From positions 4,774,001 to 4,838,000 of the forward strand of contig SMSO01000034.1 in assembly GCA_004764695.1 (NCBI GenBank): DNA of 64,000 nt, written 5' to 3'. Position numbers and translations under genes: made by a program. The notes beneath the pieces are model-generated. The model saw only the letters and a list, made by a program, of their open reading frames with translations. It made no database searches and was not told where the DNA came from. This DNA comes from Schizochytrium sp. TIO01 (taxonomy: Eukaryota > Protista > Bigyra: Labyrinthulomycetes). Every line of letters begins with the position of its first letter. Position 1 is the first letter of the stretch. Below, piece after piece: positions 21,200-31,347 of this stretch.

Positions 21200-21712
21200 C
21201 TTGCCCTTCCCACTCAGAAAACAGTACCTCCAGCTGCTGCTTTTCTCTATCAACTCTATCCACGTCAACTTTCGTTCTCACGTTTTCTCAAGAAACCTCT
21301 CTTGACGTTGAGTTACGCAACTGCACAGCACTCATAGCTCCAGCGTCGAAAGGACTTCTTCTCTGATGATAGGCTAGTTTGAAGAAGAATCAATGTGGTG
21401 GTTATGTTTTCTATTTGGTAGATAGTATTCTGGTAGAGCGATATTTGTCATATATCTCTTGATTTTCTTCTACTAGTCAAAGTTACTTTCTGCAACAACA
21501 TCGAGAATATCCATTACCAACTACCTCTATGGTATAATATTAGTATGATATTATTAATAGTATATATTGTACCTAGTCGTTCTTTCCAATGATCACCGGA
21601 ATCCCGTTGCTCTCTTATCCAAGCAGACTCGAGCGCGGGTGCCCGTCGCCGGTGTTTGCATACCTCTTCGGCGCTAAGCTGAGGTCGCGTGTTGTGCCGT
21701 TCTTTACGGACG

Positions 21713-21836
21713 ATGCCTGGGTCCCCAAAGCGGCGCGTGAGCACGCACGAGCACATGAATCCCGACGCCATGGTGACTTCGACACCAGCGATGGCAACAA
21801 GTGCACCTGGCATGGCGGAGACATCTGGCGGTCGCA

Positions 21837-21868
<32 letters not shown>

Positions 21869-22573
21869 AGTAGCGATGTACCTGCCGGTGTGGATACCTT
21901 GGCTATTCAGGAACTAGCAGCTGCGATGGAATTAGCACGGCCTTACTTCGAGCGCGTGGAAACGAAGCTTGTATTACGCAGACTTGTGCACTCCATGGTG
22001 CCCATGCACCGTGCCACTGTAGCTCTCATTGCTGACCCAGACCTCTTTGGTCCACTCATGATTGTTGCAACCGAGGCTCTGCTCTTGCAAACTGCAGGTT
22101 TTTCTCTTCTCGCTGGTATCTTGATTGCAGTCTTTTACTGGATTGGTCTTTCAGGAGGTCTCTACATTGCTCTTAAAAGGATTCTTCACGAGTTTAGTCC
22201 AATCGCAATCTCAGCTGACGGTGGTTCACCTCTAAGTCATGACGAAGAAACAGGTTTTGGGAGCGAAGATGAAGGGATAGGAGCGACGCGACAAATCTAT
22301 CAGAGACCTCTGCGGCTGGACCAACTTCTCTGTGTTTGTGGGTATGGAAGTTTTGCCCATTGCCTTCTGCTAGGGCTAACGTCGGCAGGAAGTGGAATGT
22401 TTATGATCTTGTGTAAACTTTGTGTGCTTCTTTCGAGCAGCGCATGTGTAGCCCTGGTGGTGTTTCGCAGCTTGTCGGTCTTGACGAATAACCAAGTTGC
22501 AGCCCTTGTTGGAGTTGCCGTCATCCTAATGCACGGACTTATATGGCCAATAGGTGTCGGACGCTTCCCGTGA
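21713..22573 (+). CDS. Yip1-family (YIPF) Golgi/ER membrane protein
   Basis: Motifs RPYF, PDLFGPLMIV and LLCVCGYG with ~5 hydrophobic segments. It is divergent from FEN1. Confidence 0.8.
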
Positions 22574-23240
22574 ACTAGCCTGCAATTAGCCTTGGCTCGC
22601 GAAATATGACTGGTGAACCTTCTTAGAGGTCATGTATGTCTTTGTATTGATAAACAGCTACGCGAAAATGTCCTTGTACTTTTCTTCATTTGATCGAATA
22701 TATTTGTTTTACAATTTTTCAGAATTATCCACTTGCTTCTCATAGATTTAATGTGTCTTTTTGTTAAAGTCTAGGTATAGTGATGTGGCATTTTGTATCT
22801 GATAGAATAATGAAGAAAGTATATTTTTCTTGAGTCCCTTGTTTTTTGTTTGACAAAGCCGACTCAAAGCAACTATGTAAATACTCGTGTTTTCTGGACT
22901 TCAATTATAGTTAGTCTCTATTGGAGATAGCGTGCAGGATGGATACGGCCGTGCAAAGCGAAACGCACGGGGTGTTGTAAAACACCTTCGTGAAGTGAAA
23001 TCCGCTTATTGGTCAAATATCCCATTTACTCAAAATAAAAGACATTAGCAAAGAAAAATTTAACTTGAAGTTCACATCAATTTCTCACAAGAAAATCTTC
23101 GGAGTGCGCAAACAATTACAGCTCATGGAAAGACTTAAGTCAATCTGGAACTGCAATGGAATTATTGCAAGTCCAAGCATAAAAGAGTGAAAAAAAAAGA
23201 TGCTATACAAAGCGACCTAGGGATCCAGACATCCCCAATT

Positions 23241-23345
23241 CGTGCGACGAGGAATTGAACCTCGAGACCTCGTTTGAACGATTGCTTAATGTCGAACCCT
23301 TTACGGGATTCATGAGAACGAGGCGCTGACCTTCAGCACCGCACG
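23241..23345 (-). ncRNA. Non-canonical tRNA-like RNA, copy 1 (105 nt)
   Basis: Acceptor CGTGCGG/TCGCACG; 1-nt connector; D-arm GCTG-AAGGT-CAGC; 7-bp stem CCTCGTT/AACGAGG enclosing a 42-nt insert; 3-nt variable loop; T-arm CGAGG-TTCAATT-CCTCG. TTTATAA lies ~25-31 nt upstream and T9 (23190-23198) lies downstream. Confidence 0.75.
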
Positions 23346-23569
23346 TGATTCTTCTGAGTAGCAGACCACTTATAAACCTCAGCAATTACACGTACATAAT
23401 ATCTCAATAATAAACAAACTTCCTGCACTTTGAAGAGTGGTTAGGAACTGTTTGAGAACTCAAAAAGAGTGAACCCGGAACTTCAATGGAATTGTTGCAA
23501 ATCTAAGCATGAAAGAAGAAAAAAAAAGATGCTATACAAAGCGACCTAGAGATCCAGACATCCCCAATT

Positions 23570-23674
23570 CGTGCGACGAGGAATTGAACCTCGAGACCTC
23601 GTTTGAACGATTGCTTAGTGTCGAACCCTTAACGGGATCCATGAGAACGAGGCGCTGACCTTCAGCACCGCACG
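23570..23674 (-). ncRNA. Non-canonical tRNA-like RNA, copy 2
   Basis: Same as copy 1. The substitutions fall in the insert and trailer and keep their hairpins through G-U pairs. Confidence 0.75.
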
Positions 23675-23899
23675 TGATTCTTCTGAGGAGCAGACCACTT
23701 ATAAACCTCAGCAATTACACGTACATAATATCTCAATAATAAACAAACTTCCTGCACTTTGAAGAGTGGTTAGGAACTGTTTGAGAACTCAAAAAGAGTG
23801 AACCCGGAACTGCAATGGAATTGTTGCAAATCTAAGCATGAAAGAAGAAAAAAAAAAGATGCTATACAAAGCGACCTAGAGATCCAGACATCCCCAATT

Positions 23900-24004
23900 C
23901 GTGCGACGAGGAATTGAACCTCGAGACCTCGTTTGAACGATTGCTTAGTGTCGAACCCTTAACGGGATCCATGAGAACGAGGCGCTGACCTTCAGCACCG
24001 CACG
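23900..24004 (-). ncRNA. Non-canonical tRNA-like RNA, copy 3
   Basis: Same as copy 2. Confidence 0.75.
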
Positions 24005-24503
24005 TGATTCTTCTGAGTAGCAGACCTCTTATAAACCTCAGCGCGACTTCCGTACCAAAGTTCGTTTGATCCGAAGCAAGTTCCCCAAACGATCTTCATT
24101 GGGTCCAAGTAGGTTCTAGGTACGTTCTAAGAACCAAACCTACCAGTTCCAAAAGGAAATCTCTCTGGTCTGGATCGAAGTTCATTAGATACAAGTGCTA
24201 CTAATACTTACTTACATGAGTTATCTTTTAAAAATAATTTTAAAATATTAAAAAGAAAAAGAAAAAGATATTTAAATATGCACGGTACGTAGGTACATAT
24301 TTCTTTAAAAGATTAAAGTAAGCACAAGAAATACAAAGTACACTCCACCAGCTGGAGCACGATTTCTTGCGCGAGTTGTTTGTTTGTTTCTTTCTCTACG
24401 CTCGACAGGCGCCAAGTCCAGCGAAGCGGGGACAATTCACACGCAATCGAAGCTCAATAGATTGAAAAAGAGAGTGCGGACCGCTGCAACAGCTGTCCGC
24501 CTA

Positions 24504-24592
24504 CACGCGACGAGGACTTGAACCTCGGAATCCCGATAGATTAATCCAAGTTTTAAATGAGAAATCGGGACGCTATCCTTTAGCACCGCGCG
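24504..24592 (-). ncRNA. Non-canonical tRNA-like RNA, divergent paralogue (89 nt)
   Basis: Acceptor CGCGCGG/TCGCGTG; D-arm GCTA-AAGGA-TAGC; 7-bp stem TCCCGAT/ATCGGGA with a 26-nt insert; T-arm CGAGG-TTCAAGT-CCTCG. It is followed by the hairpin GCGGAC..GTCCGC (24476-24500) and T5 (24465-24469). Confidence 0.75.
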
Positions 24593-25133
24593 TTACCGCT
24601 ATCAAGAAATCACACGTCGACCTTCGCGGGAATCGATCCTAAGACTTCGCTCGCGAGAGACCCAAAGCGCAGTTATACTGAAGAAGTTCATGACCTGCCA
24701 GTATAAGGAATGCTGCGCGTCGCGGTTTTATATGGCGGGGTCCGCGGAAGTACGGTATCTGAGGAAATTGGACGGAGGGAAAGAAGGCGGAACCGCGAGC
24801 GAAAGATATTGGAGAGCGCTGCGAACGGCTGCAGAGGATGCGGCCGTGGACTGAGTAGCTGATGGTGACGAGTCTGCGCATCGTTGTGCCGTAGTTGGAT
24901 TGAGGAGGTCCTCGGAACGTTCAAGGAAAGTAAAAAATGAAAGCAAAAATTAGAGGATTTTGAACTTCAAAATTGACGTCGCGAGGTGAAACCAAACCGC
25001 TTTCCTTCTTCAGCTTCTTGGACCTTGTGCAAGGGAGAGGCGTCGCTGGGCCAGCAAATCTGAAACTCGGTTCAAGAGTTGGTTGCGAGAACAGACAGGG
25101 TGGGGCGCGGTTCTCAACAGGGAAGACGGGAAG

Positions 25134-28100
25134 ATGGCACAGGCTGGCGAGCCCACGAAGGTGGGGGTGCTGGGGCTGCTCGGTGGCTTCTCTGGAGATG
25201 AGGAGAAGCGCGAATGTCTAGAGGCACTCTTTAAGGACGGCCGGCTGCCCAGCGCTGAGGAAGTTATGAAGGCGGTGCAGAATTTGCCTCACAAGACTCG
25301 CGTGAGCCTGTTGGCGATACAAATCCGCGATGCCAAAGCACAAGGACGTGAGCTAGACGGCCTAGCCGACCTTGTGTACAGCCTCCTCACAATGCAAGAT
25401 TCAAGCATATCAAGTGCAAACGAGAGCGACAACGCTGGCAATGATTCCCAACGATGATTCTATGGAAGAGGCGTCAGTGTCACCACTCACGGATAACGAG
25501 TTTGTGCGTGTTCTTTATGCAGACGCCAACCCAGTGCGTATGACGAATCGGCAAGATCTAGCTGAGATTGCCCTCACTGTGGCACCCCAACTTGGCAGAC
25601 GGGGAGCCGATATGCTCTTGTACGCCGTGGCAGAGGCTAGCGTCTCAATGCAGGCTCTGGCGATGCGTGGAGCGGTAAAGTGCAAGGATGTCTTGGACGA
25701 GGAATTGGTGATGCTGGTAAGCTCTGCGCGTACTGCTCAAGAGATGCGCACCCGCACAGAGCAAGTTCTGCGTGGCAGACCCTCTACGGGAGTGGCTGAC
25801 GCTCTCTTTGAGAATTTGAGGTATCCAGAGCCCACCCTTGCCTTCAATGTAGTTATGCCCAACTGCAGCGCCGGGCTGGTCATAAAACTGGTACGGGAGT
25901 CGCTAGACAAAGTCCTCGTAGGTTTGCCTCTGACCTCGGAACCATCCAGGCCTCTGCTTAATCATCTTCCAATGAAAAGGCTCTGGAACCGCTATAGTGA
26001 CTCACTACTTCAAGCTTATGAGACTTATCTGCAGGCTGCAAAGGCAAAGGGGGGAGCGCATGCCCTGGTTGGCGTTGGCCAGATTCACCTGATGTGGGCC
26101 TCTGTAGTGCAATCTTGGCAAGGTGTTCCGCGTGCTGGGAGTACCCGTCTTTTGCGTCTCATTATGGCATATCCGCCCTTTGCATTTCAAAATAACTCAC
26201 CCGCACACCAGGGTGACCTCTTGAAACAAATAACACAACATGATGTGAATGAGCTTACTGAGAACGTTCTTCAGCTGAAACTGCCTAACTGGTTCACCGC
26301 GAACAGCCCCATTCTATCTTCGCTAAGCTTTCAGCAAGTTGTGGATGTCTACCTAGGATGCTTCCAGACTCCCTTGGCTAAAACTGATCCTGCATCCAGT
26401 CTTCCTGTGATTGTGAGTTCGCTGAAATGGGCTCCCGTTGCAGGTACACTCGGCAAACACTTGCATGTCCGCCTGAACAGGAAACTTGCTCGAGACATTC
26501 GCTTTGCCTCAAGTAAGGGGAAAACAGAAGCTTTGCAAAAGCTTATCACTTGGTATGTGGCACAAATCACAAAACTTATTCAAAGTGAAGACAATGTTAC
26601 GCTTGGCACAAACAACGAGACCTCCCCGCTAGTATGGGACTTCACACTTTGCCAGGTATTACCCGAACCTGGGGAAACATGCCGCCAGGGTCAACTTCAG
26701 CGCGAGGCAACACTATTCAGTCGGGCTCGGGCCCGCTTTGATGAGCATATTTCAGGCTTGAATGAGCACATTGGAAAAGGAATATTCGGTGCTTTCGAGA
26801 TAGACAATTCAAACTTTTCAAGTAAGCTCGGTAAAACCATGTGTGATGCACGTTTCGATGCAATTATCCACTTTGCAGAACAACTTTTGCTACGTGCTGA
26901 CCAGGGCAATGCCGCAACGGAAAAGGACAAGACAAAGAAGGTTATGCTTGTTGGATTTGCAAAGAGCTTGTTTCTCTACGCTAGCGCCCTGGTGCATCAC
27001 GTTCAGGACATAAGCAGGTACCTTACGCTTCTTCGTGCTATGGTCTCCAAATGGCTCCCCATTCATGAAGCTCTGTCAAGTGTGACTGCAACAAATGCAG
27101 CTTACGAAAGTTCGTATGGCTATAGAAATCGTCATAGATATGAGCCTATTCAATTTTCAGAGTCAACTTTTATACTAGAACTCTGTCGTGCCTTGAAATA
27201 TGGCAAGGAGGGAAACCAGTGGAAACAGATTATGAAAGTTGTATTGGATGGGTGCGTTAAATCACACCTTGAAAGACTCGAATTTATGCTCCAGCCGCAT
27301 ATATTAGACCGCGTCAGTAGTGTCTTTGAGTGCCTAAATTCAATTGACAATGATCTCACTAGTCTCCTTAATAACCCTGAAGTTTCCGGAACTGATGGTT
27401 TTGCCTATTGGAAACATCTCATCGACGAGGTGGGAGAAAAGGGTCTTGCCATGATAGTAAATCAGTGGCAAAAGTATGCACGACACTCTGCGTTTGAGTT
27501 CCCTCCGATGCCGGAGGATGCCGACAGCTCGATGATTTGGAGCTCTGAGGCACACAAACTTGTGAAAGCAAACTATGAGAAGTCCACATCTCTATCTCTA
27601 CAAAGGGATATGCTTGCTCGGTGGGAAAGTATGGTAAGCACAATGTACGCGCCAATTGCACAGTCCAAGACCTTTTCAAAACACAATGTTGATGAGATTT
27701 TCTGGAAGTATCGGCCACCCTGTAAGATCTCTCCTCAGATTTTTGGCAACCTCTTAGTCAAGATGCTGATAGTGGGCCCCGAGGGCGCCTCTAGCGACCG
27801 AGAGAGGCTATGCGAGATTGTTAAGGATCTAGCAAAGATTGTGTGTGAAACGTCCAACACGGAAACATCGAACTCTTTGTCACGAATCTTGGCAACTCTT
27901 GTGAGATTTAGAGCGACAATCCCTATTGAAAAAGTATTTCCAGGCATTGGGGAAATCTTCGTGGAAGCTGTGACCTGTGATGAACATTTTCTCTTTTCAT
28001 TTGTGACTTCGCAGTTGAACAGGTTACCAGGCTCTTCATCGAGTTCCATCGACTTTGTTGATCGAACTATTCATGTTGTTATGACTGAATTTATTCCTCA

Positions 28101-31100
28101 GCTCAAGGTCCTTCGGCCATCTGAGCAGCAGACGTTGATAAAATCTCTTGAGAGCAATGCTCACATGCGGGATCGAGCTTTTGCAAAAACTCGCCGTGAG
28201 GCTTGCAAACAGAAAAACTTTTCTCCAGGACGTCGCCAGGTATACAGTGAACTTCTTCGAAAAGCTTGCCAGCGGAAAGGCTACACAAGCATTGCACAAT
28301 TATTTGCTAATCAGGTGCGTAGTATCATGAATGAGCAAGGTCCTTACCGTCTTGAAGCTCTAGCAGATCTGAACGGAATATGGGATACGATTGTGCCCCT
28401 ATTTTTGCTTGTACCAGTGGTTGATAGCCGTTTCCCGCATTACATTGTCGATACAGCAAATCAAAGCGGCTTTTTGCAGGCTTGGGAATTACCTCGCTGT
28501 GCTGAACAGGTTCGCGCTGCATTTGAAAAGCTGACGCAGGACACGGTTGGTGCAATCAATATGGATGCCCGCTCTATGACAGCTGCCAAGTCCCACCTCG
28601 AAGGTATGATCTCATATGTGCAAACCATATGCTGTTTCCGACTTGAAGCTCGTAATAATGAGTTGCAGCAAAGCTCTGACAACTACATGGAAGAAAGGAA
28701 GAAATGGTATATCTCTGCCGCAAAGTGTAAATTGATGATCGAGAGTGTAACTCAGGGAACGCGCGCTCTTGAGTCTATTCAACTTGGGTTTGCCAACATG
28801 GAATCTGCCCAAAAGAGCCCTCTTCGTATAGACTTTGACACTGATCTTAAACCAATGCTTGACTCAGTCCTTCATCAAGATGCCTCGGAGACAGCTCGTG
28901 CTGATTATCTTCGTGCCATTCAGACAGAGAACAAAATGATTCCGCGAGCCCATGTCACATTTGAAATCGACGTGTTCGAGCTCCTCGAGATTGTGCAGGC
29001 AGGATATGCAAGCCTTGGTTTGGATGAACCCTTTTCGCCATCCAATATGCTAGCTCCTACATTGGAGCGTCTTAACAGCCTGGTAACAGCGATTGGCGCC
29101 TTCTGGCCGGCGATTCCAGGTATTCTGAAGACTATTGAGACTCTGAGCAAGGCATCATCTGTACCAAGAGATCGGCTCTGCGATTTGCGAGGAACCTATC
29201 AGCTTATTCAGTCCCTTTTCGATCTGACTGAAAGCTTTGAACCACTTGGTATGGCCTTACCCAGTTTGCGCAGTGCGATTTATCGCCTAGTGTGTGAGGG
29301 AATTCCAGCTGCGTCAAAAACATATATTTATAGGCATCCAGGCGAGAGTTATGACGCTAACCTTCATAAAAGTATCGCGTCCGGATGGGAGAAGGTCAAC
29401 CGTGTCAACGAGGCTTTTTGCACACTAGGGGCTAATTTGGAACACCTGTTGACGACAAAGCTTGGCCCTCGTTCATTGGCGGCCTTTCATTGGCTAAATA
29501 AACTCCTTCCGCCCGTCTGTAGTCCAGAGGATGCTTTGAACAGGAAAGATATCCAGCTTCAAGCACGCATTGCCAGAGATCTGTTGCGTGTGGATAAGAG
29601 TGCTGTGCACCTACCATTTGTGCAAAAGGTGCTCTGCAACATACGCCAAGACCACTTGTGGCCATTTGTAAATCCATTATTGCCTCACGAAAATTTTGCA
29701 GGTCAGTTTCAAATGGAAGCAGCAAGCACGATAGAAAGCTTATTATCTATGACAGATCCGAAAGAACGCGAAGAGTTCTTGCAAAGCATTGTAGGTTTCC
29801 GTCTTGGTCAGCTTGGAAATCGCTTACGTCTGCAAAAACTCCCTGTCCCTGTATTACATCGTCTTGCAGAACAATGCTGGGAGGACTTTTCAAATGAAAA
29901 GCTTACCTTTAAGGAACGTCAAGATGCTCTTGTGCAGTGGCTCAGGAACCCGTCATTGGGTTCGCGGGAGGTGGTAAATAGCCTTGTCGAACTATATGAA
30001 GTTGCTGCCAAGGAAACCGAGGAAAGTAATGCTCTGTCTCCTCAGACGCAGGGAAGTATTTCCAGTATTATTGCTGGCATGTTTTCCATCCAAGATCCAC
30101 TCTCATGCCTTGGCTTTCTTCTATCCCCGAGTGTCATGCAAAAGGACTATGGCAACGCAACTGCAACTGCACTTGCTGGAGCACGGCAGAAAATAAGCGA
30201 GTCCAAGTTTGTGGAACTTATTCGGATTGTGTTGGGGCCGGATCACCGGAAGGTCTTGAAAGTAGGGCTTCATAAATCTTTGGTGCGTCTCCTGACAAGC
30301 TTGCAGACGCCAGCAGCTCTAGATCTGCTCAAGTCAGAGTGGAACCAGAAGGAACCTGCACTGCATTTAGACGTGAAACGTGTCATTGTGCAATTTGCAC
30401 TGTCTTGTTTAGACTCTGGTCGCGATGGGCGTGCAAAAGCTGAGGACTCGTGGCTAGCTGTCGAGGCTGACTTTGCCATGTCCATCCTGCAAGACCTTGC
30501 AACTGCGACCCGGCATGAGATGGACTTGCGAGGCTATTTGCTTGGTGCGCAGCCTGAGAATACGCCTTACATAGATGGCCCTGACCGCAACAAGTTTTGG
30601 CGCTCCCATGCTGGTACATTCCATACGGTACTTTCTCAATTCAAGTTAGAAGTAAACCGATCGGATCTCCACATTGATGCTGCCTATGATGCGGCCATGT
30701 CCACTGCAACAACCATTCACCGAAAACATGCCTCGGAGTTTTACAAGCGTGTCATTGTACGACTCGCTTGTGTTGCTCGCCCTGCCGAGGAATCATTTGT
30801 GATTCCCGTTGCGCGAGTACTCGCCACTACTTCCTGGGCAGAATATGTTCAGGATGCTGACTTTATCATACGCCTATTAAGCGAGGTGCAGATTCAGACT
30901 GCACCTTCCTTGAAGGACTTGACTAGCCTGGCCGTCCTCGCAGAATCTAGTCATGAGCTCTTTCAGGTGCGAGGTCTAAGCGCGGCCCTTGTGTGGCACC
31001 GACTGGTGCGACAATACTGCAAGGATTCAAAGGAATACGCAATCACAGCTACAGCAAAGCAAATTGAGGATGATGTAAATGTTTTACTCACTGAGTCGCG

Positions 31101-31347
31101 CATTAATTTGAACAAGATTCTTTTGGCGACTGCCAGACTTGAGACAATTGCCTGGGTTGCACTCTCGTTGGCAAATGAAAGTCAAAGAGAGGCCAGGATC
31201 GAAAATTATGCGTTTTTGCGAGGTTGTTATGGCTACGTTGGAGATCATGAAGTTGCGATGAGGAAGCTTCAGAGGGCTGGTCTTTTATCAGAGGGCATGA
31301 AGCTGAATCAAGTCTGCTCCACCTTTTTCTCTTCGAATTCTCGCTGA
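25134..31347 (+). CDS. Large (~2070 aa) uncharacterised, predicted alpha-helical protein; apparent 1-nt frameshift near 25448
   Basis: The 1991-aa ORF overlaps an upstream ORF starting MAQAGEPTKV (ATG 25134). Removing one C from 'gattcccaacgat' joins them (…AGNDSNDDSMEEAS…). I recognise no catalytic motifs. Confidence 0.75.

What the first reader, a model, noticed from the sequence alone, without database searches (positions are those of the whole stretch)
23241..24592. Family of non-canonical tRNA-shaped RNAs with covarying stems and a tRNA-Pyl/mt-tRNA-Ser(UCN)-like geometry
Seen: three tandem copies and one divergent paralogue fold identically. Each has a 7-bp acceptor, a single connector nt, a 4-bp D-stem with a 5-nt loop (AAGGW), one nt, a perfect 7-bp 'anticodon' stem, a 3-nt variable loop and a canonical T-arm (B-box GGTTCAAxTCC). 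Between the two types the pairs change compensatorily: D-stem GCTG/CAGC vs GCTA/TAGC; central stem CCTCGTT/AACGAGG vs TCCCGAT/ATCGGGA (three pair swaps); acceptor T-A vs C-G. In place of a 7-nt anticodon loop there is a 42- or 26-nt insert, and only TTCTCAT is shared, offset by 2 nt between types. Each gene has a 3' trailer hairpin followed by a T-run, and copies 1-3 have TTTATAA at about -30. Known: a 1-nt connector, 5-nt D-loop, extended anticodon stem and 3-nt variable loop characterise tRNA-Pyl and mammalian mt-tRNA-Ser(UCN), not cytosolic eukaryotic tRNAs. Inference: a selected Pol III RNA family. It could be intron-containing atypical tRNAs (the anticodon reads CAT, CTC or TCA depending on register) or tRNA mimics/processing scaffolds. 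The covariation argues against decayed pseudogenes.
Basis: partly seen in the sequence, partly recalled or inferred. Interest (0 to 1): 0.85.

Follow-up and report, generated by a model that had tools for sequence, protein, structure and literature searches.

The report
Four odd tRNA-shaped genes in protist
A marine protist (probably the thraustochytrid Aurantiochytrium) has four neighbouring genes for unusually compact tRNA-shaped RNAs; their stems have been kept by matching mutations, but standard tRNA models do not recognise them, they duplicate no missing tRNA, and whether they are expressed or spliced could not be tested.

Summary
On the minus strand lie one divergent gene (24502-24592) and three tandem copies (23899-24004, 23569-23674, 23240-23345). 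All four fold into the same cloverleaf: 7-bp acceptor, one connector nucleotide, a 4-bp D stem with a 5-nt AAGGW loop, a 7-bp central helix, a 3-nt variable loop and a normal T arm. All 23 pairs hold in every copy, and 5 pairs changed on both sides.

These are the only four such genes found in the 64-Mb genome. Rfam's tRNA model misses them even at E<=10. It scores three of the host's intron-containing tRNA families (initiator Met, Pro, Gly) at 39-50 bits.

They carry the host's tRNA-gene grammar: an upstream GTTTATA box on the tandem copies and T-run terminators on all four. Between tandem copies the exons are unchanged, while the DNA after the terminator differs at 17% of sites.

Ordinary genes for Glu-CUC, Glu-UUC, both Met tRNAs and Sec exist elsewhere, so these four fill no gap. 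The 26/42-nt insert fits the host's tRNA-intron rule only in the divergent copy.

My best reading (confidence 0.4) is atypical intron-containing tRNA genes with anticodon CUC. An unspliced tRNA mimic is nearly as likely. No RNA evidence was obtained. The scan had noted only this same stretch before, not other DNA.

The parts
24502..24592 (-). Divergent tRNA-shaped gene (copy D). The acceptor runs 24586-24592 / 24504-24510 and the nucleotide at position 73 is 24503.
   Evidence: ARAGORN calls it an intron-containing tRNA, but the anticodon changes with the settings: Met-cat, Arg-tct. Cloverleaf minimum-energy fold z -2.7. Model R1 scores 88 bits.
23899..24004 (-). Tandem copy 3 of the tRNA-shaped gene
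   Evidence: R1 133.8 bits
23569..23674 (-). Tandem copy 2 of the tRNA-shaped gene
23240..23345 (-). Tandem copy 1 of the tRNA-shaped gene
   Evidence: It differs from copies 2 and 3 at 3 positions, all inside the insert.
24538..24563 (-). 26-nt insert of copy D, between the two strands of the 7-bp helix. It begins with UUCUCAU.
   Evidence: Alignment A2. In the 7-bp register it reads U33, CUC, A37, with a 19-nt intron and a 32:-3 U:A pair.
23275..23316 (-). 42-nt insert of copy 1. The equivalent inserts are 23604-23645 in copy 2 and 23934-23975 in copy 3.
   Evidence: Alignment A2. No register gives a 32:-3 pair. All three differences between copy 1 and copies 2/3 lie here.
23370..23376 (-). 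Upstream TTTATAA box at -31..-25 of copy 1. The same box lies at 23699-23705 (copy 2) and 24029-24035 (copy 3).
   Evidence: A similar GTTTATAT / GTATAAAT box lies at about -30 to -41 upstream of the host's Pro-CGG, initiator-Met and Gly-UCC genes.
23199..23239 (-). 41-nt 3' trailer of copy 1 with an 8-bp hairpin. The equivalents are 23528-23568 (copy 2) and 23858-23898 (copy 3).
   Evidence: z -1.7 and -1.0, not significant. One change in 41 nt between copies.
23190..23198 (-). T9 terminator run of copy 1. The equivalents are 23519-23527 (copy 2) and 23848-23857 (copy 3).
   Evidence: Identity between copy 1 and copy 2 falls to 83% just beyond it.
24470..24502 (-). 3' trailer of copy D, with a 10-bp G+C-rich hairpin
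   Evidence: -16.8 kcal/mol, z -3.4
24465..24469 (-). T5 terminator run of copy D

Best explanation
These are four real nuclear genes of the tRNA type, transcribed by RNA polymerase III, and they form a private family.

Their product has a compact core: only U8 as connector, a minimal D loop that still holds A14 and G18 G19, and a 3-nt variable loop. It keeps a standard 12-bp acceptor/T-arm stack and a standard T loop. It should therefore be cut by RNase P and RNase Z and receive CCA like a tRNA.

The 26/42-nt insert behaves like an intron. It sits in the anticodon arm, it evolves fast, and it follows a conserved UUCUCA block that has the form of anticodon-loop positions 32-37 (U33, anticodon CUC, A37).

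The most coherent reading is that the insert is removed, giving an extra, structurally non-canonical tRNA with anticodon CUC. The anticodon stem would be 5 bp in the tandem type and 7 bp in the divergent type. This RNA is not part of the ordinary decoding set.

Shown here: the structure, the compensatory changes, the promoter and terminator grammar, the copy number, and the redundancy with canonical tRNAs.

Inferred only: transcription, end processing, splicing, the anticodon, and any charging with an amino acid.
For: - Structure and covariation.
- Only four members in the genome: BLAST, covariance model, a generic pattern for the compact D arm plus B box and the T-arm pattern.
- Promoter and terminator: the upstream GTTTATA-type box is shared with the host's Pro-CGG, initiator-Met and Gly-UCC genes. 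The host's initiator-Met genes also have a long trailer before the T-run.
- Constraint ends at the terminator. Copy 1 against copy 2 shows 0/64 changes in exons, 3/42 in the insert, 1/41 in the trailer and 10/58 after the T-run (Fisher p = 4e-4).
- The insert is unconserved between the two types except for UUCUCAU, which has U at its 2nd and A at its 6th position.
- Insert lengths after assigning the loop (19-39 nt) fall in the range of the host's real tRNA introns, 14-38 nt.
- Copy D in the 7-bp register has the 32:-3 pair and a 3-nt bulge at the 3' splice site, like the host's real introns.
- ARAGORN accepts all four as intron-containing tRNAs.
- The neighbours are ordinary nuclear genes: an ion channel and a FEN1/XPG nuclease.
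Against:
- In copies 1-3 no register gives the 32:-3 anticodon-intron pair, and the expected 3' splice site lies inside a helix. All four control families of the host have that pair, and the three checked for it (Pro, initiator Met, Gly) also have an anticodon stem that cannot be extended beyond 5 bp.
- The CUC reading requires anticodon stems of different length (5 and 7 bp) on the same body, which is hard to reconcile with ribosomal decoding.
- With one common 7-bp geometry the anticodons would differ (CAU with G37, against CUC).
- ARAGORN's anticodon calls disagree with one another (Met, Arg, Sec).
- Canonical Glu-CUC (23 genes), Glu-UUC (5), elongator Met (9), initiator Met and Sec genes all exist, so there is no decoding gap to fill.
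- The covariation rests on only two independent lineages.
Confidence: 0.4

Rival explanations
1. Unspliced tRNA mimic. The RNA keeps its insert, and the tRNA-shaped body serves as a Pol III promoter, an RNase P/Z processing handle, a stabilising scaffold or a protein decoy. The long central arm and/or the 3' trailer would be the variable payload. It would not decode.
For: - The conserved feature of the central arm is a 7-bp helix, not a fixed anticodon register. After a 2-nt shift of UUCUCAU the helix is still 7 bp, and its sixth pair changes U-A to A-U.
- Copies 1-3 lack the host's splice-site grammar.
- All plausible anticodons are redundant with canonical genes.
- Rfam's tRNA model gives no hit, while it scores the controls at 39-50 bits.
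- Both types carry a trailer of 33-41 nt with a hairpin before the T-run.
Against: - If the insert were the payload it should be conserved between the two types. Only UUCUCAU is, and that block has the form of an anticodon loop.
- The trailer hairpins are short (8-10 bp), are not alike in the two types, and are no better than shuffled sequence in the tandem copies.
- No target, partner or downstream small-RNA family was found.
- There is no primer-binding site in the genome complementary to its 3' end plus CCA (tested only for the tandem type).
Confidence: 0.3
2. Both types share one geometry, a 7-bp anticodon stem on the compact core. They would be spliced to different tRNAs: CAU (three tandem genes, loop CUCAUGA) and CUC (divergent gene, loop UUCUCAU).
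For: The 7-bp helix is perfect in all four genes. In this register both types have U33 and a purine at position 37. ARAGORN's default run also reads cat in copy D.
Against: - The shared UUCUCAU would then be a coincidence of a shifted 7-mer.
- CAU with G37 is an unnatural combination; on established knowledge A37 is universal for tRNAs that read A-starting codons.
- Copies 1-3 have no 32:-3 pair in this register.
- Canonical elongator and initiator Met genes exist.
- A 7-bp stem is longer than the 6 bp of the known compact tRNAs.
Confidence: 0.1
3. Non-functional relics of a tRNA gene. They would be kept alike by recent duplication and gene conversion, with pairing preserved by chance.
For: Copies 2 and 3 are 99% identical over the whole 330-bp unit, so they are recent duplicates. 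No relatives were found in any collection searched. The genes are redundant with canonical tRNAs.
Against: - All eleven stem differences between the two types keep the pairing, five of them as double changes.
- Every loop nucleotide needed for tertiary contacts is kept (U8, A14, G18 G19, U54 U55 C56, A58).
- Exons show 0/64 changes against 10/58 just past the terminator.
- The promoter box is kept at -30 even upstream of copy 3, where the rest of the flank is unrelated.
Confidence: 0.12
4. Suppressor or selenocysteine-type tRNA with anticodon UCA and an intron at the non-canonical position 32/33, as ARAGORN draws copies 1-3.
For: ARAGORN with introns of 0-80 nt calls copies 1-3 tRNA-SeC(tca), with the loop UUUCAAA.
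Against: - A canonical tRNA-Sec exists elsewhere and scores 70 bits on RF01852.
- These genes have no long variable arm and no 9/4 or 8/5 acceptor/T layout.
- The same program gives Arg-tct for copy D, with the intron at a different place.
- All host tRNA introns seen here are at position 37/38.
Confidence: 0.04

Closest known systems
Mammalian mitochondrial tRNA-Ser(UCN), the 'type I' mt-tRNA
   Same: One nucleotide between the acceptor and D stems, a small D loop, an anticodon stem longer than 5 bp, a 3-nt variable loop, and G18 G19 and T-psi-C retained (PMC7609411).
   Different: The genes here are nuclear, not mitochondrial. They are Pol III genes with an upstream TATA-type box and a T-run. 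They carry a 26/42-nt insert. The helix is 7 bp, not 6. No register gives the anticodon UGA. This organism's own mitochondrial tRNA-Ser(UGA) is an ordinary long-arm tRNA.
tRNA-Pyl (Methanosarcina, Desulfitobacterium)
   Same: A single connector nucleotide, a 5-nt D loop, a 3-nt variable loop and an elongated anticodon stem.
   Different: tRNA-Pyl has a CUA anticodon, G1:C72 and G73, and lacks G18 G19 and T-psi-C. The genes here have C1:G72, A73 or U73, GG in the D loop and a UUC T loop. They give no CUA in any canonical register. tRNA-Pyl is archaeal or bacterial and has no intron.
The host's own intron-containing nuclear tRNA genes (Pro-CGG, initiator Met, elongator Met, Gly-UCC)
   Same: An upstream GTTTATA-type box (not checked for elongator Met), internal A/B-box regions, an insert in the anticodon loop region of similar length (14-38 nt) and a T-run terminator. 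The initiator-Met genes also have a 36-nt trailer.
   Different: The host genes have a 2-nt connector, a normal D loop and a 4-5-nt variable loop, with a 5-bp anticodon stem that the intron cannot extend and a 32:-3 pair. Three of these families (all but elongator Met, which was not scanned) score 39-50 bits on Rfam's tRNA model. The four genes here fail the body features, and copies 1-3 also fail the 32:-3 pair.
Pol III units made of a tRNA-like body plus downstream hairpins (TMERs of murine gammaherpesvirus 68; plant tRNA-snoRNA dicistrons). This comparison is from my own knowledge.
   Same: A tRNA-shaped body that provides the Pol III promoter, followed by a hairpin-containing trailer and a T-run.
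   Different: The trailer hairpins here are only 8-10 bp, too short for a pre-miRNA. No snoRNA boxes or Rfam match were found. The locus is chromosomal and not viral by its neighbours.

Membership tests
Canonical cytosolic tRNA (Rfam RF00005) | Scores above the gathering threshold (29 bits) on the tRNA covariance model | tested here: not met
   No tRNA hit at the gathering score or even at E<=10 over 23100-24700. The host's intron-containing Pro, initiator-Met and Gly genes score 39-50 bits in the same test.
Canonical cytosolic tRNA (Rfam RF00005) | Two connector nucleotides (8, 9), a D loop of 7 nt or more, and a variable loop of 4-5 nt (class I) | tested here: not met
   One connector nucleotide, a 5-nt D loop and a 3-nt variable loop in all four genes.
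Canonical cytosolic tRNA (Rfam RF00005) | 7-bp acceptor stem, 5-bp T stem, a T-psi-C-type loop, and G18 G19 | tested here: met
   loops UUCAAUU / UUCAAGU and AAGGU / AAGGA.
Canonical cytosolic tRNA (Rfam RF00005) | A 7-nt anticodon loop with U33 and a purine at 37, in one consistent register after removing a 37/38 intron | tested here: inconclusive
   The tandem type passes with a 5-bp stem (CUC) or a 7-bp stem (CAU). Copy D passes only with a 7-bp stem (CUC).
Eukaryotic tRNA intron (Sen-complex substrate) | A 32:-3 anticodon-intron pair, with the 3' splice site in a single-stranded bulge | tested here: inconclusive
   Met by copy D in the 7-bp register (U:A). Not met by copies 1-3 in any register, where the site lies inside the 7-bp helix. 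All four host control families meet it. Background: PMC4090602.
tRNA-Pyl | CUA anticodon; G1:C72 and G73; no G18 G19 and no T-psi-C | tested here: not met
   No CUA in any canonical register. The genes have C1:G72, GG in the D loop and a UUC T loop. Features taken from PMC7609411.
tRNA-Pyl | A cognate PylRS encoded in the genome | not tested
   Not searched. Membership already fails on the anticodon and the loops.
Type I mt-tRNA-Ser(UCN) | Compact core (1-nt connector, small D loop, 3-nt variable loop) with G18 G19 and T-psi-C kept | tested here: met
Type I mt-tRNA-Ser(UCN) | Encoded in the mitochondrial genome, anticodon UGA, 6-bp anticodon stem | tested here: not met
   The locus is on a nuclear chromosome (C33) among nuclear genes. 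There is no similarity to the 21 mitochondrial tRNAs. The helix is 7 bp and no register reads UGA.
tRNA-Sec (RF01852) | 13-bp acceptor/T domain, 6-bp D stem, long variable arm, UCA anticodon | tested here: not met
   RF01852 does not hit the locus. It finds a canonical tRNA-Sec at C36:4224424-4224509 at 70 bits. The genes here have a 7/5 layout and a 3-nt variable loop.
tRNA-derived SINE | Many dispersed, decaying copies | tested here: not met
   Four copies, all at one locus.

The most novel reading that the evidence does not exclude
A eukaryotic nucleus encodes a private class of compact tRNAs of the Pyl / mt-Ser(UCN) type. Under this reading they are expressed, lose a non-standard intron, and are charged. 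They would then serve a specialised role outside the ordinary decoding set, for example a dedicated or orthogonal aminoacylation pair, condition-specific recoding of GAG, or a non-ribosomal use of aminoacyl-tRNA.
Probability: 0.2. Interest if true: 0.85.

Novelty: new variant of a known kind. Interest (0 to 1): 0.6.

Why it matters
As far as the review read here (PMC7609411) and my own knowledge go, compact tRNAs with one connector nucleotide and a 3-nt variable loop are known from archaeal and bacterial tRNA-Pyl and from animal mitochondria. I found no report of them among nuclear, Pol III-transcribed genes of a eukaryote.

If these RNAs are made and charged, they would be a natural, structurally orthogonal-looking tRNA scaffold in a eukaryotic cytoplasm. 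They would also test how RNase P, RNase Z, the splicing endonuclease and the synthetases cope with a shrunken core.

If they are unspliced mimics, they add a new tRNA-like Pol III RNA. This genome already shows several other odd tRNA gene layouts, according to unchecked notes of this scan.

The practical point is that standard annotation misses them. Rfam gives no hit, and ARAGORN gives three conflicting identities.

Tried and rejected
RNA evidence
- The look-up of sequencing runs lists 14 transcriptome-sized runs, only guessed to be RNA, from several organism labels. They hold 0.09-0.35 of the stretch's words. Three pre-tRNA-sized pieces would give about 0.2, but this proves nothing.

Relatives elsewhere
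- The viral-contig scan found none.
- The metagenome scan gave 64 loci and the prokaryote genome scan 37. None is a relative. The best R1 scores were 35 and 30 bits, from prokaryote-type tRNAs or chance matches.
- No collection of eukaryotic genomes was available, so orthologues in other thraustochytrids could not be sought, and R-scape is not meaningful with two lineages.

Identity
- Not Sec.
- Not a copy of a mitochondrial tRNA.
- The mitochondrial genome lacks tRNA-Arg and tRNA-Thr, but only one unstable ARAGORN call (Arg-tct for copy D) points that way.
- No retroelement primer-binding site complementary to the tandem type's 3' end plus CCA. Copy D's 3' end was not tested.
- A GTAAAG...AG stretch inside the tandem insert is only 20 nt long and is not kept in copies 2 and 3, so I rejected it as an mRNA-type intron.
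- No box C/D motif. The SNORD46 and CRISPR-DR33 matches are at chance level (E of 3-4).
- Two further exact T-arm matches in the genome (C31, C13) lie in coding-like sequence, not in tRNAs.

Joined (spliced) sequences were not sent to any search tool. Registers were only tabulated inside scripts.
Full report
WHAT IS THERE

The finding lies on the minus strand. Reading 5' to 3' on that strand there is first a divergent gene (copy D, 24592 to 24502). About 500 nt further on come three head-to-tail copies inside 330-bp repeat units: copy 3 (24004-23899), copy 2 (23674-23569) and copy 1 (23345-23240).

All four share one layout:
- a 7-bp acceptor stem starting with C1:G72;
- U8 as the only connector nucleotide;
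- a 4-bp D stem closed by a 5-nt loop, AAGGU or AAGGA;
- G26;
- a perfect 7-bp central helix;
- an insert of 42 nt (tandem type) or 26 nt (copy D);
- a 3-nt variable loop;
- a 5-bp T stem with the loop UUCAAUU or UUCAAGU.

The free-energy folds recover this cloverleaf unaided, with z = -3.4, -2.5 and -2.7.

IS IT MORE THAN CHANCE?

On alignment A2 all 23 pairs are standard pairs in every row. Five pairs differ on both sides between the two types and one changes G-C to G-U. Only 1 of 500 shuffles reaches this. Sliding the partners by 1-3 columns drops pairing to 30-49% and leaves 0-1 double changes.

Outside the insert the two types differ at 16 of 65 columns. All 11 differences that fall in stems preserve pairing. 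The nucleotides that make the tertiary contacts of a tRNA are all kept: U8, A14, G18 G19, U54 U55 C56 and A58.

The caveat is that there are only two independent lineages. Copies 2 and 3 are 99% identical recent duplicates.

HOW MANY COPIES, AND WHERE?

Five searches of the 64-Mb assembly find these four genes and nothing else of the kind:
- BLAST;
- a covariance model built from the four genes (R1);
- a generic pattern for the compact D arm plus B box, with short or long spacing;
- the exact T-arm pattern. Its two extra hits outside known tRNA genes lie in coding-like DNA; the rest are the mitochondrial tRNA-Met and the canonical tRNA-Sec.

So this is not a SINE. The neighbours are ordinary nuclear genes, an ion channel and a FEN1/XPG nuclease, and base composition is unremarkable.

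The genome is most likely Aurantiochytrium limacinum.

GENE GRAMMAR

Copies 1-3 carry TTTATAA at -31..-25. This box and the roughly 37 nt next to the gene are kept even upstream of copy 3, where the rest of the flank is unrelated.

The host's real Pro-CGG, initiator-Met and Gly-UCC genes carry the same kind of box (GTTTATAT, GTATAAAT) at about -30 to -41.

The first T-run lies at +42 (T9-T10) for the tandem copies and at +34 (T5) for copy D. Most host tRNA genes terminate at +2 to +11, but the initiator-Met genes also have a 36-nt trailer.

Comparing copy 1 with copy 2 gives these change counts:

| Segment | Changes |
|---|---|
| Exons | 0 of 64 |
| Insert | 3 of 42 |
| Trailer | 1 of 41 |
| First 58 nt after the T-run | 10 of 58 |

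Exons against the post-terminator stretch give Fisher p = 4e-4. Constraint therefore seems to end at the terminator. Part of this gradient could simply reflect the edge of the repeat array.

Only copy D's trailer hairpin is better than shuffled sequence (z -3.4). The 148 nt upstream of copy D are not (z -0.4).

WHAT STANDARD TOOLS SAY

Rfam finds no family here, neither at the gathering score nor at E<=10. This failure is not caused by the insert. The same model scores the host's Pro-CGG (38-nt intron), initiator-Met (30-31 nt) and Gly-UCC (23 nt) genes at 39-50 bits.

ARAGORN accepts the four genes as intron-containing tRNAs but changes its mind about them:
- By default it reports only copy D, as Met-cat.
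- With introns of 0-80 nt it reports copy D as Arg-tct and copies 1-3 as SeC-tca, with introns at 34/35 and 32/33.

These calls come from the program's freedom to place the intron. They are not evidence of identity.

WHICH ANTICODON, AND IS THE INSERT AN INTRON?

I tabulated the registers. With the canonical 37/38 site:

| Type | 5-bp stem | 6-bp stem | 7-bp stem |
|---|---|---|---|
| Tandem copies | CUC (U33, A37) | C33, fails | CAU (U33, G37) |
| Copy D | UUC with U37, fails | UCU with C37, fails | CUC (U33, A37) |

The only block shared by the two inserts, UUCUCAU, is 7 nt long with U second and A sixth, which is the form of an anticodon loop. Aligned on it, both types read CUC. Copy D then has two more base pairs (AU/AU) and a 3-nt bulge (UCU) that the tandem type lacks.

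Four real intron-containing tRNA families of this genome served as controls: Pro-CGG, initiator Met, Gly-UCC and elongator Met. All pair position 32 with the intron nucleotide 3 nt before the 3' splice site. For Pro-CGG, initiator Met and Gly-UCC the script also shows a 5-bp anticodon stem that the intron cannot extend. Elongator Met was parsed by hand from the matched strings. This agrees with the published picture of splice sites lying in single-stranded stretches next to helices, measured from the tRNA body (PMC4090602).

Copy D in its 7-bp register obeys this rule (U:A, U:A, then a 3-nt bulge). Copies 1-3 obey it in no canonical register, and their expected 3' site lies inside the 7-bp helix. 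By hand, the rule would be met in the tandem type only if the intron sat one position later, at 38/39. That placement would also give the loop UUCUCAU. This last point is inference.

IS THERE A DECODING GAP TO FILL?

No. The genome holds:
- 23 ordinary Glu-CUC genes;
- 5 Glu-UUC genes;
- 9 elongator-Met genes with a 13-14-nt intron;
- initiator-Met genes;
- a canonical tRNA-Sec at 70 bits.

The mitochondrial genome (41.7 kb) encodes 21 ordinary tRNAs. It lacks Arg and Thr. None of its tRNAs resembles these genes.

CONCLUSION

The body of the RNA is under selection, and the genes have the host's tRNA-gene promoter and terminator signals.

The insert behaves like an intron in its position, its length and its rate of change. 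It fits the host's splicing grammar only in copy D.

I rank the readings as follows:
- Spliced, supernumerary, structurally non-canonical tRNA with anticodon CUC: 0.4.
- Unspliced tRNA mimic or scaffold: 0.3.
- One common 7-bp geometry with different anticodons (CAU and CUC): 0.1.
- Non-functional relics: 0.12.
- UCA suppressor or Sec-type tRNA: 0.04.

COMPARISON WITH KNOWN FAMILIES

The geometry is that of type I mitochondrial tRNA-Ser(UCN), and it partly matches tRNA-Pyl (PMC7609411). Membership of either family fails on anticodon, genome compartment, helix length and, for Pyl, the loops and acceptor identity. tRNA-Sec and SINE membership also fail.

LIMITS OF THIS WORK

I worked beside those places and sent none of their letters to any search tool afterwards.
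- No eukaryotic genome collection was at hand.
- Joined exon sequences were not sent to any search tool.
- The run search shows that transcriptome-sized assemblies from several labelled organisms hold 9-35% of the stretch's words. This is compatible with expression or conservation of a discrete part, but it is not evidence for either.

Noticed in passing
L088:1485-1594; L114:485-588 and 1474-1576; L123:1471-1565; G000:C34:4233740-4240621: Four ordinary tRNA families of this genome carry canonical 37/38 introns, and all have a 32:-3 pair: Pro-CGG (38 nt), initiator Met (30-31 nt), Gly-UCC (23 nt) and elongator Met (13-14 nt). An intron in the initiator tRNA is unusual among eukaryotes, from my own knowledge.
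   Followed up: partly
L088, L114, L123 and window 23370-23376, 23699-23705, 24029-24035: A GTTTATA(T/A) or GTATAAAT box at about -25 to -41 lies upstream of several tRNA gene families. It looks like a genome-wide upstream Pol III promoter element. Glu-CUC, Glu-UUC and Val genes do not show it clearly.
   Followed up: partly
L114, 36 nt downstream of the initiator-Met genes; window 24628-24640 (minus strand, upstream of copy D); window about 23470-23480 and 23800-23810 (spacer after the T-run): B-box-like motifs (GTTCGATTCC, GATCGATTCCC, GGGTTCACTC) recur in the flanks of tRNA-type genes. They may be remnants of T arms or small tRNA-like minihelices.
   Followed up: no
L012, L055, L056 (tRNA-Gly UCC); L040:1044-1128 (tRNA-Ser GGA): Metagenomic tRNA arrays with encoded CCA contain compact tRNAs with the same D arm (GCUN-AAGGN-NAGC). 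L056 also has the single U8 connector and a 3-nt variable loop. So this compact D arm is not confined to tRNA-Pyl and mt-tRNA-Ser(UCN).
   Followed up: partly
G000:C37 (41,662 bp; also present as a doubled copy in C15): The mitochondrial genome encodes 21 tRNAs by ARAGORN. It has no tRNA-Arg, no tRNA-Thr and no Leu-UAA, so it must import some tRNAs.
   Followed up: partly
G000:C4:1180673-1186760 and C32:562828-564237: There are dense tandem arrays of identical tRNA-Glu genes. They hold 23 CUC genes in all, with 5 UUC genes interleaved among them on C32.
   Followed up: no
window 25372-31347 (+) and 21689-22573 (+): Long open frames of 1991 aa and 294 aa flank the cluster and have no Pfam match.
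   Followed up: no
L066:108-176 (-): This metagenomic tRNA-array member is the best outside match to model R1 (35 bits). It has a T arm almost identical to that of the four genes, an encoded CCA, and an apparent 4-bp anticodon stem with a 9-nt loop (hand parse).
   Followed up: no
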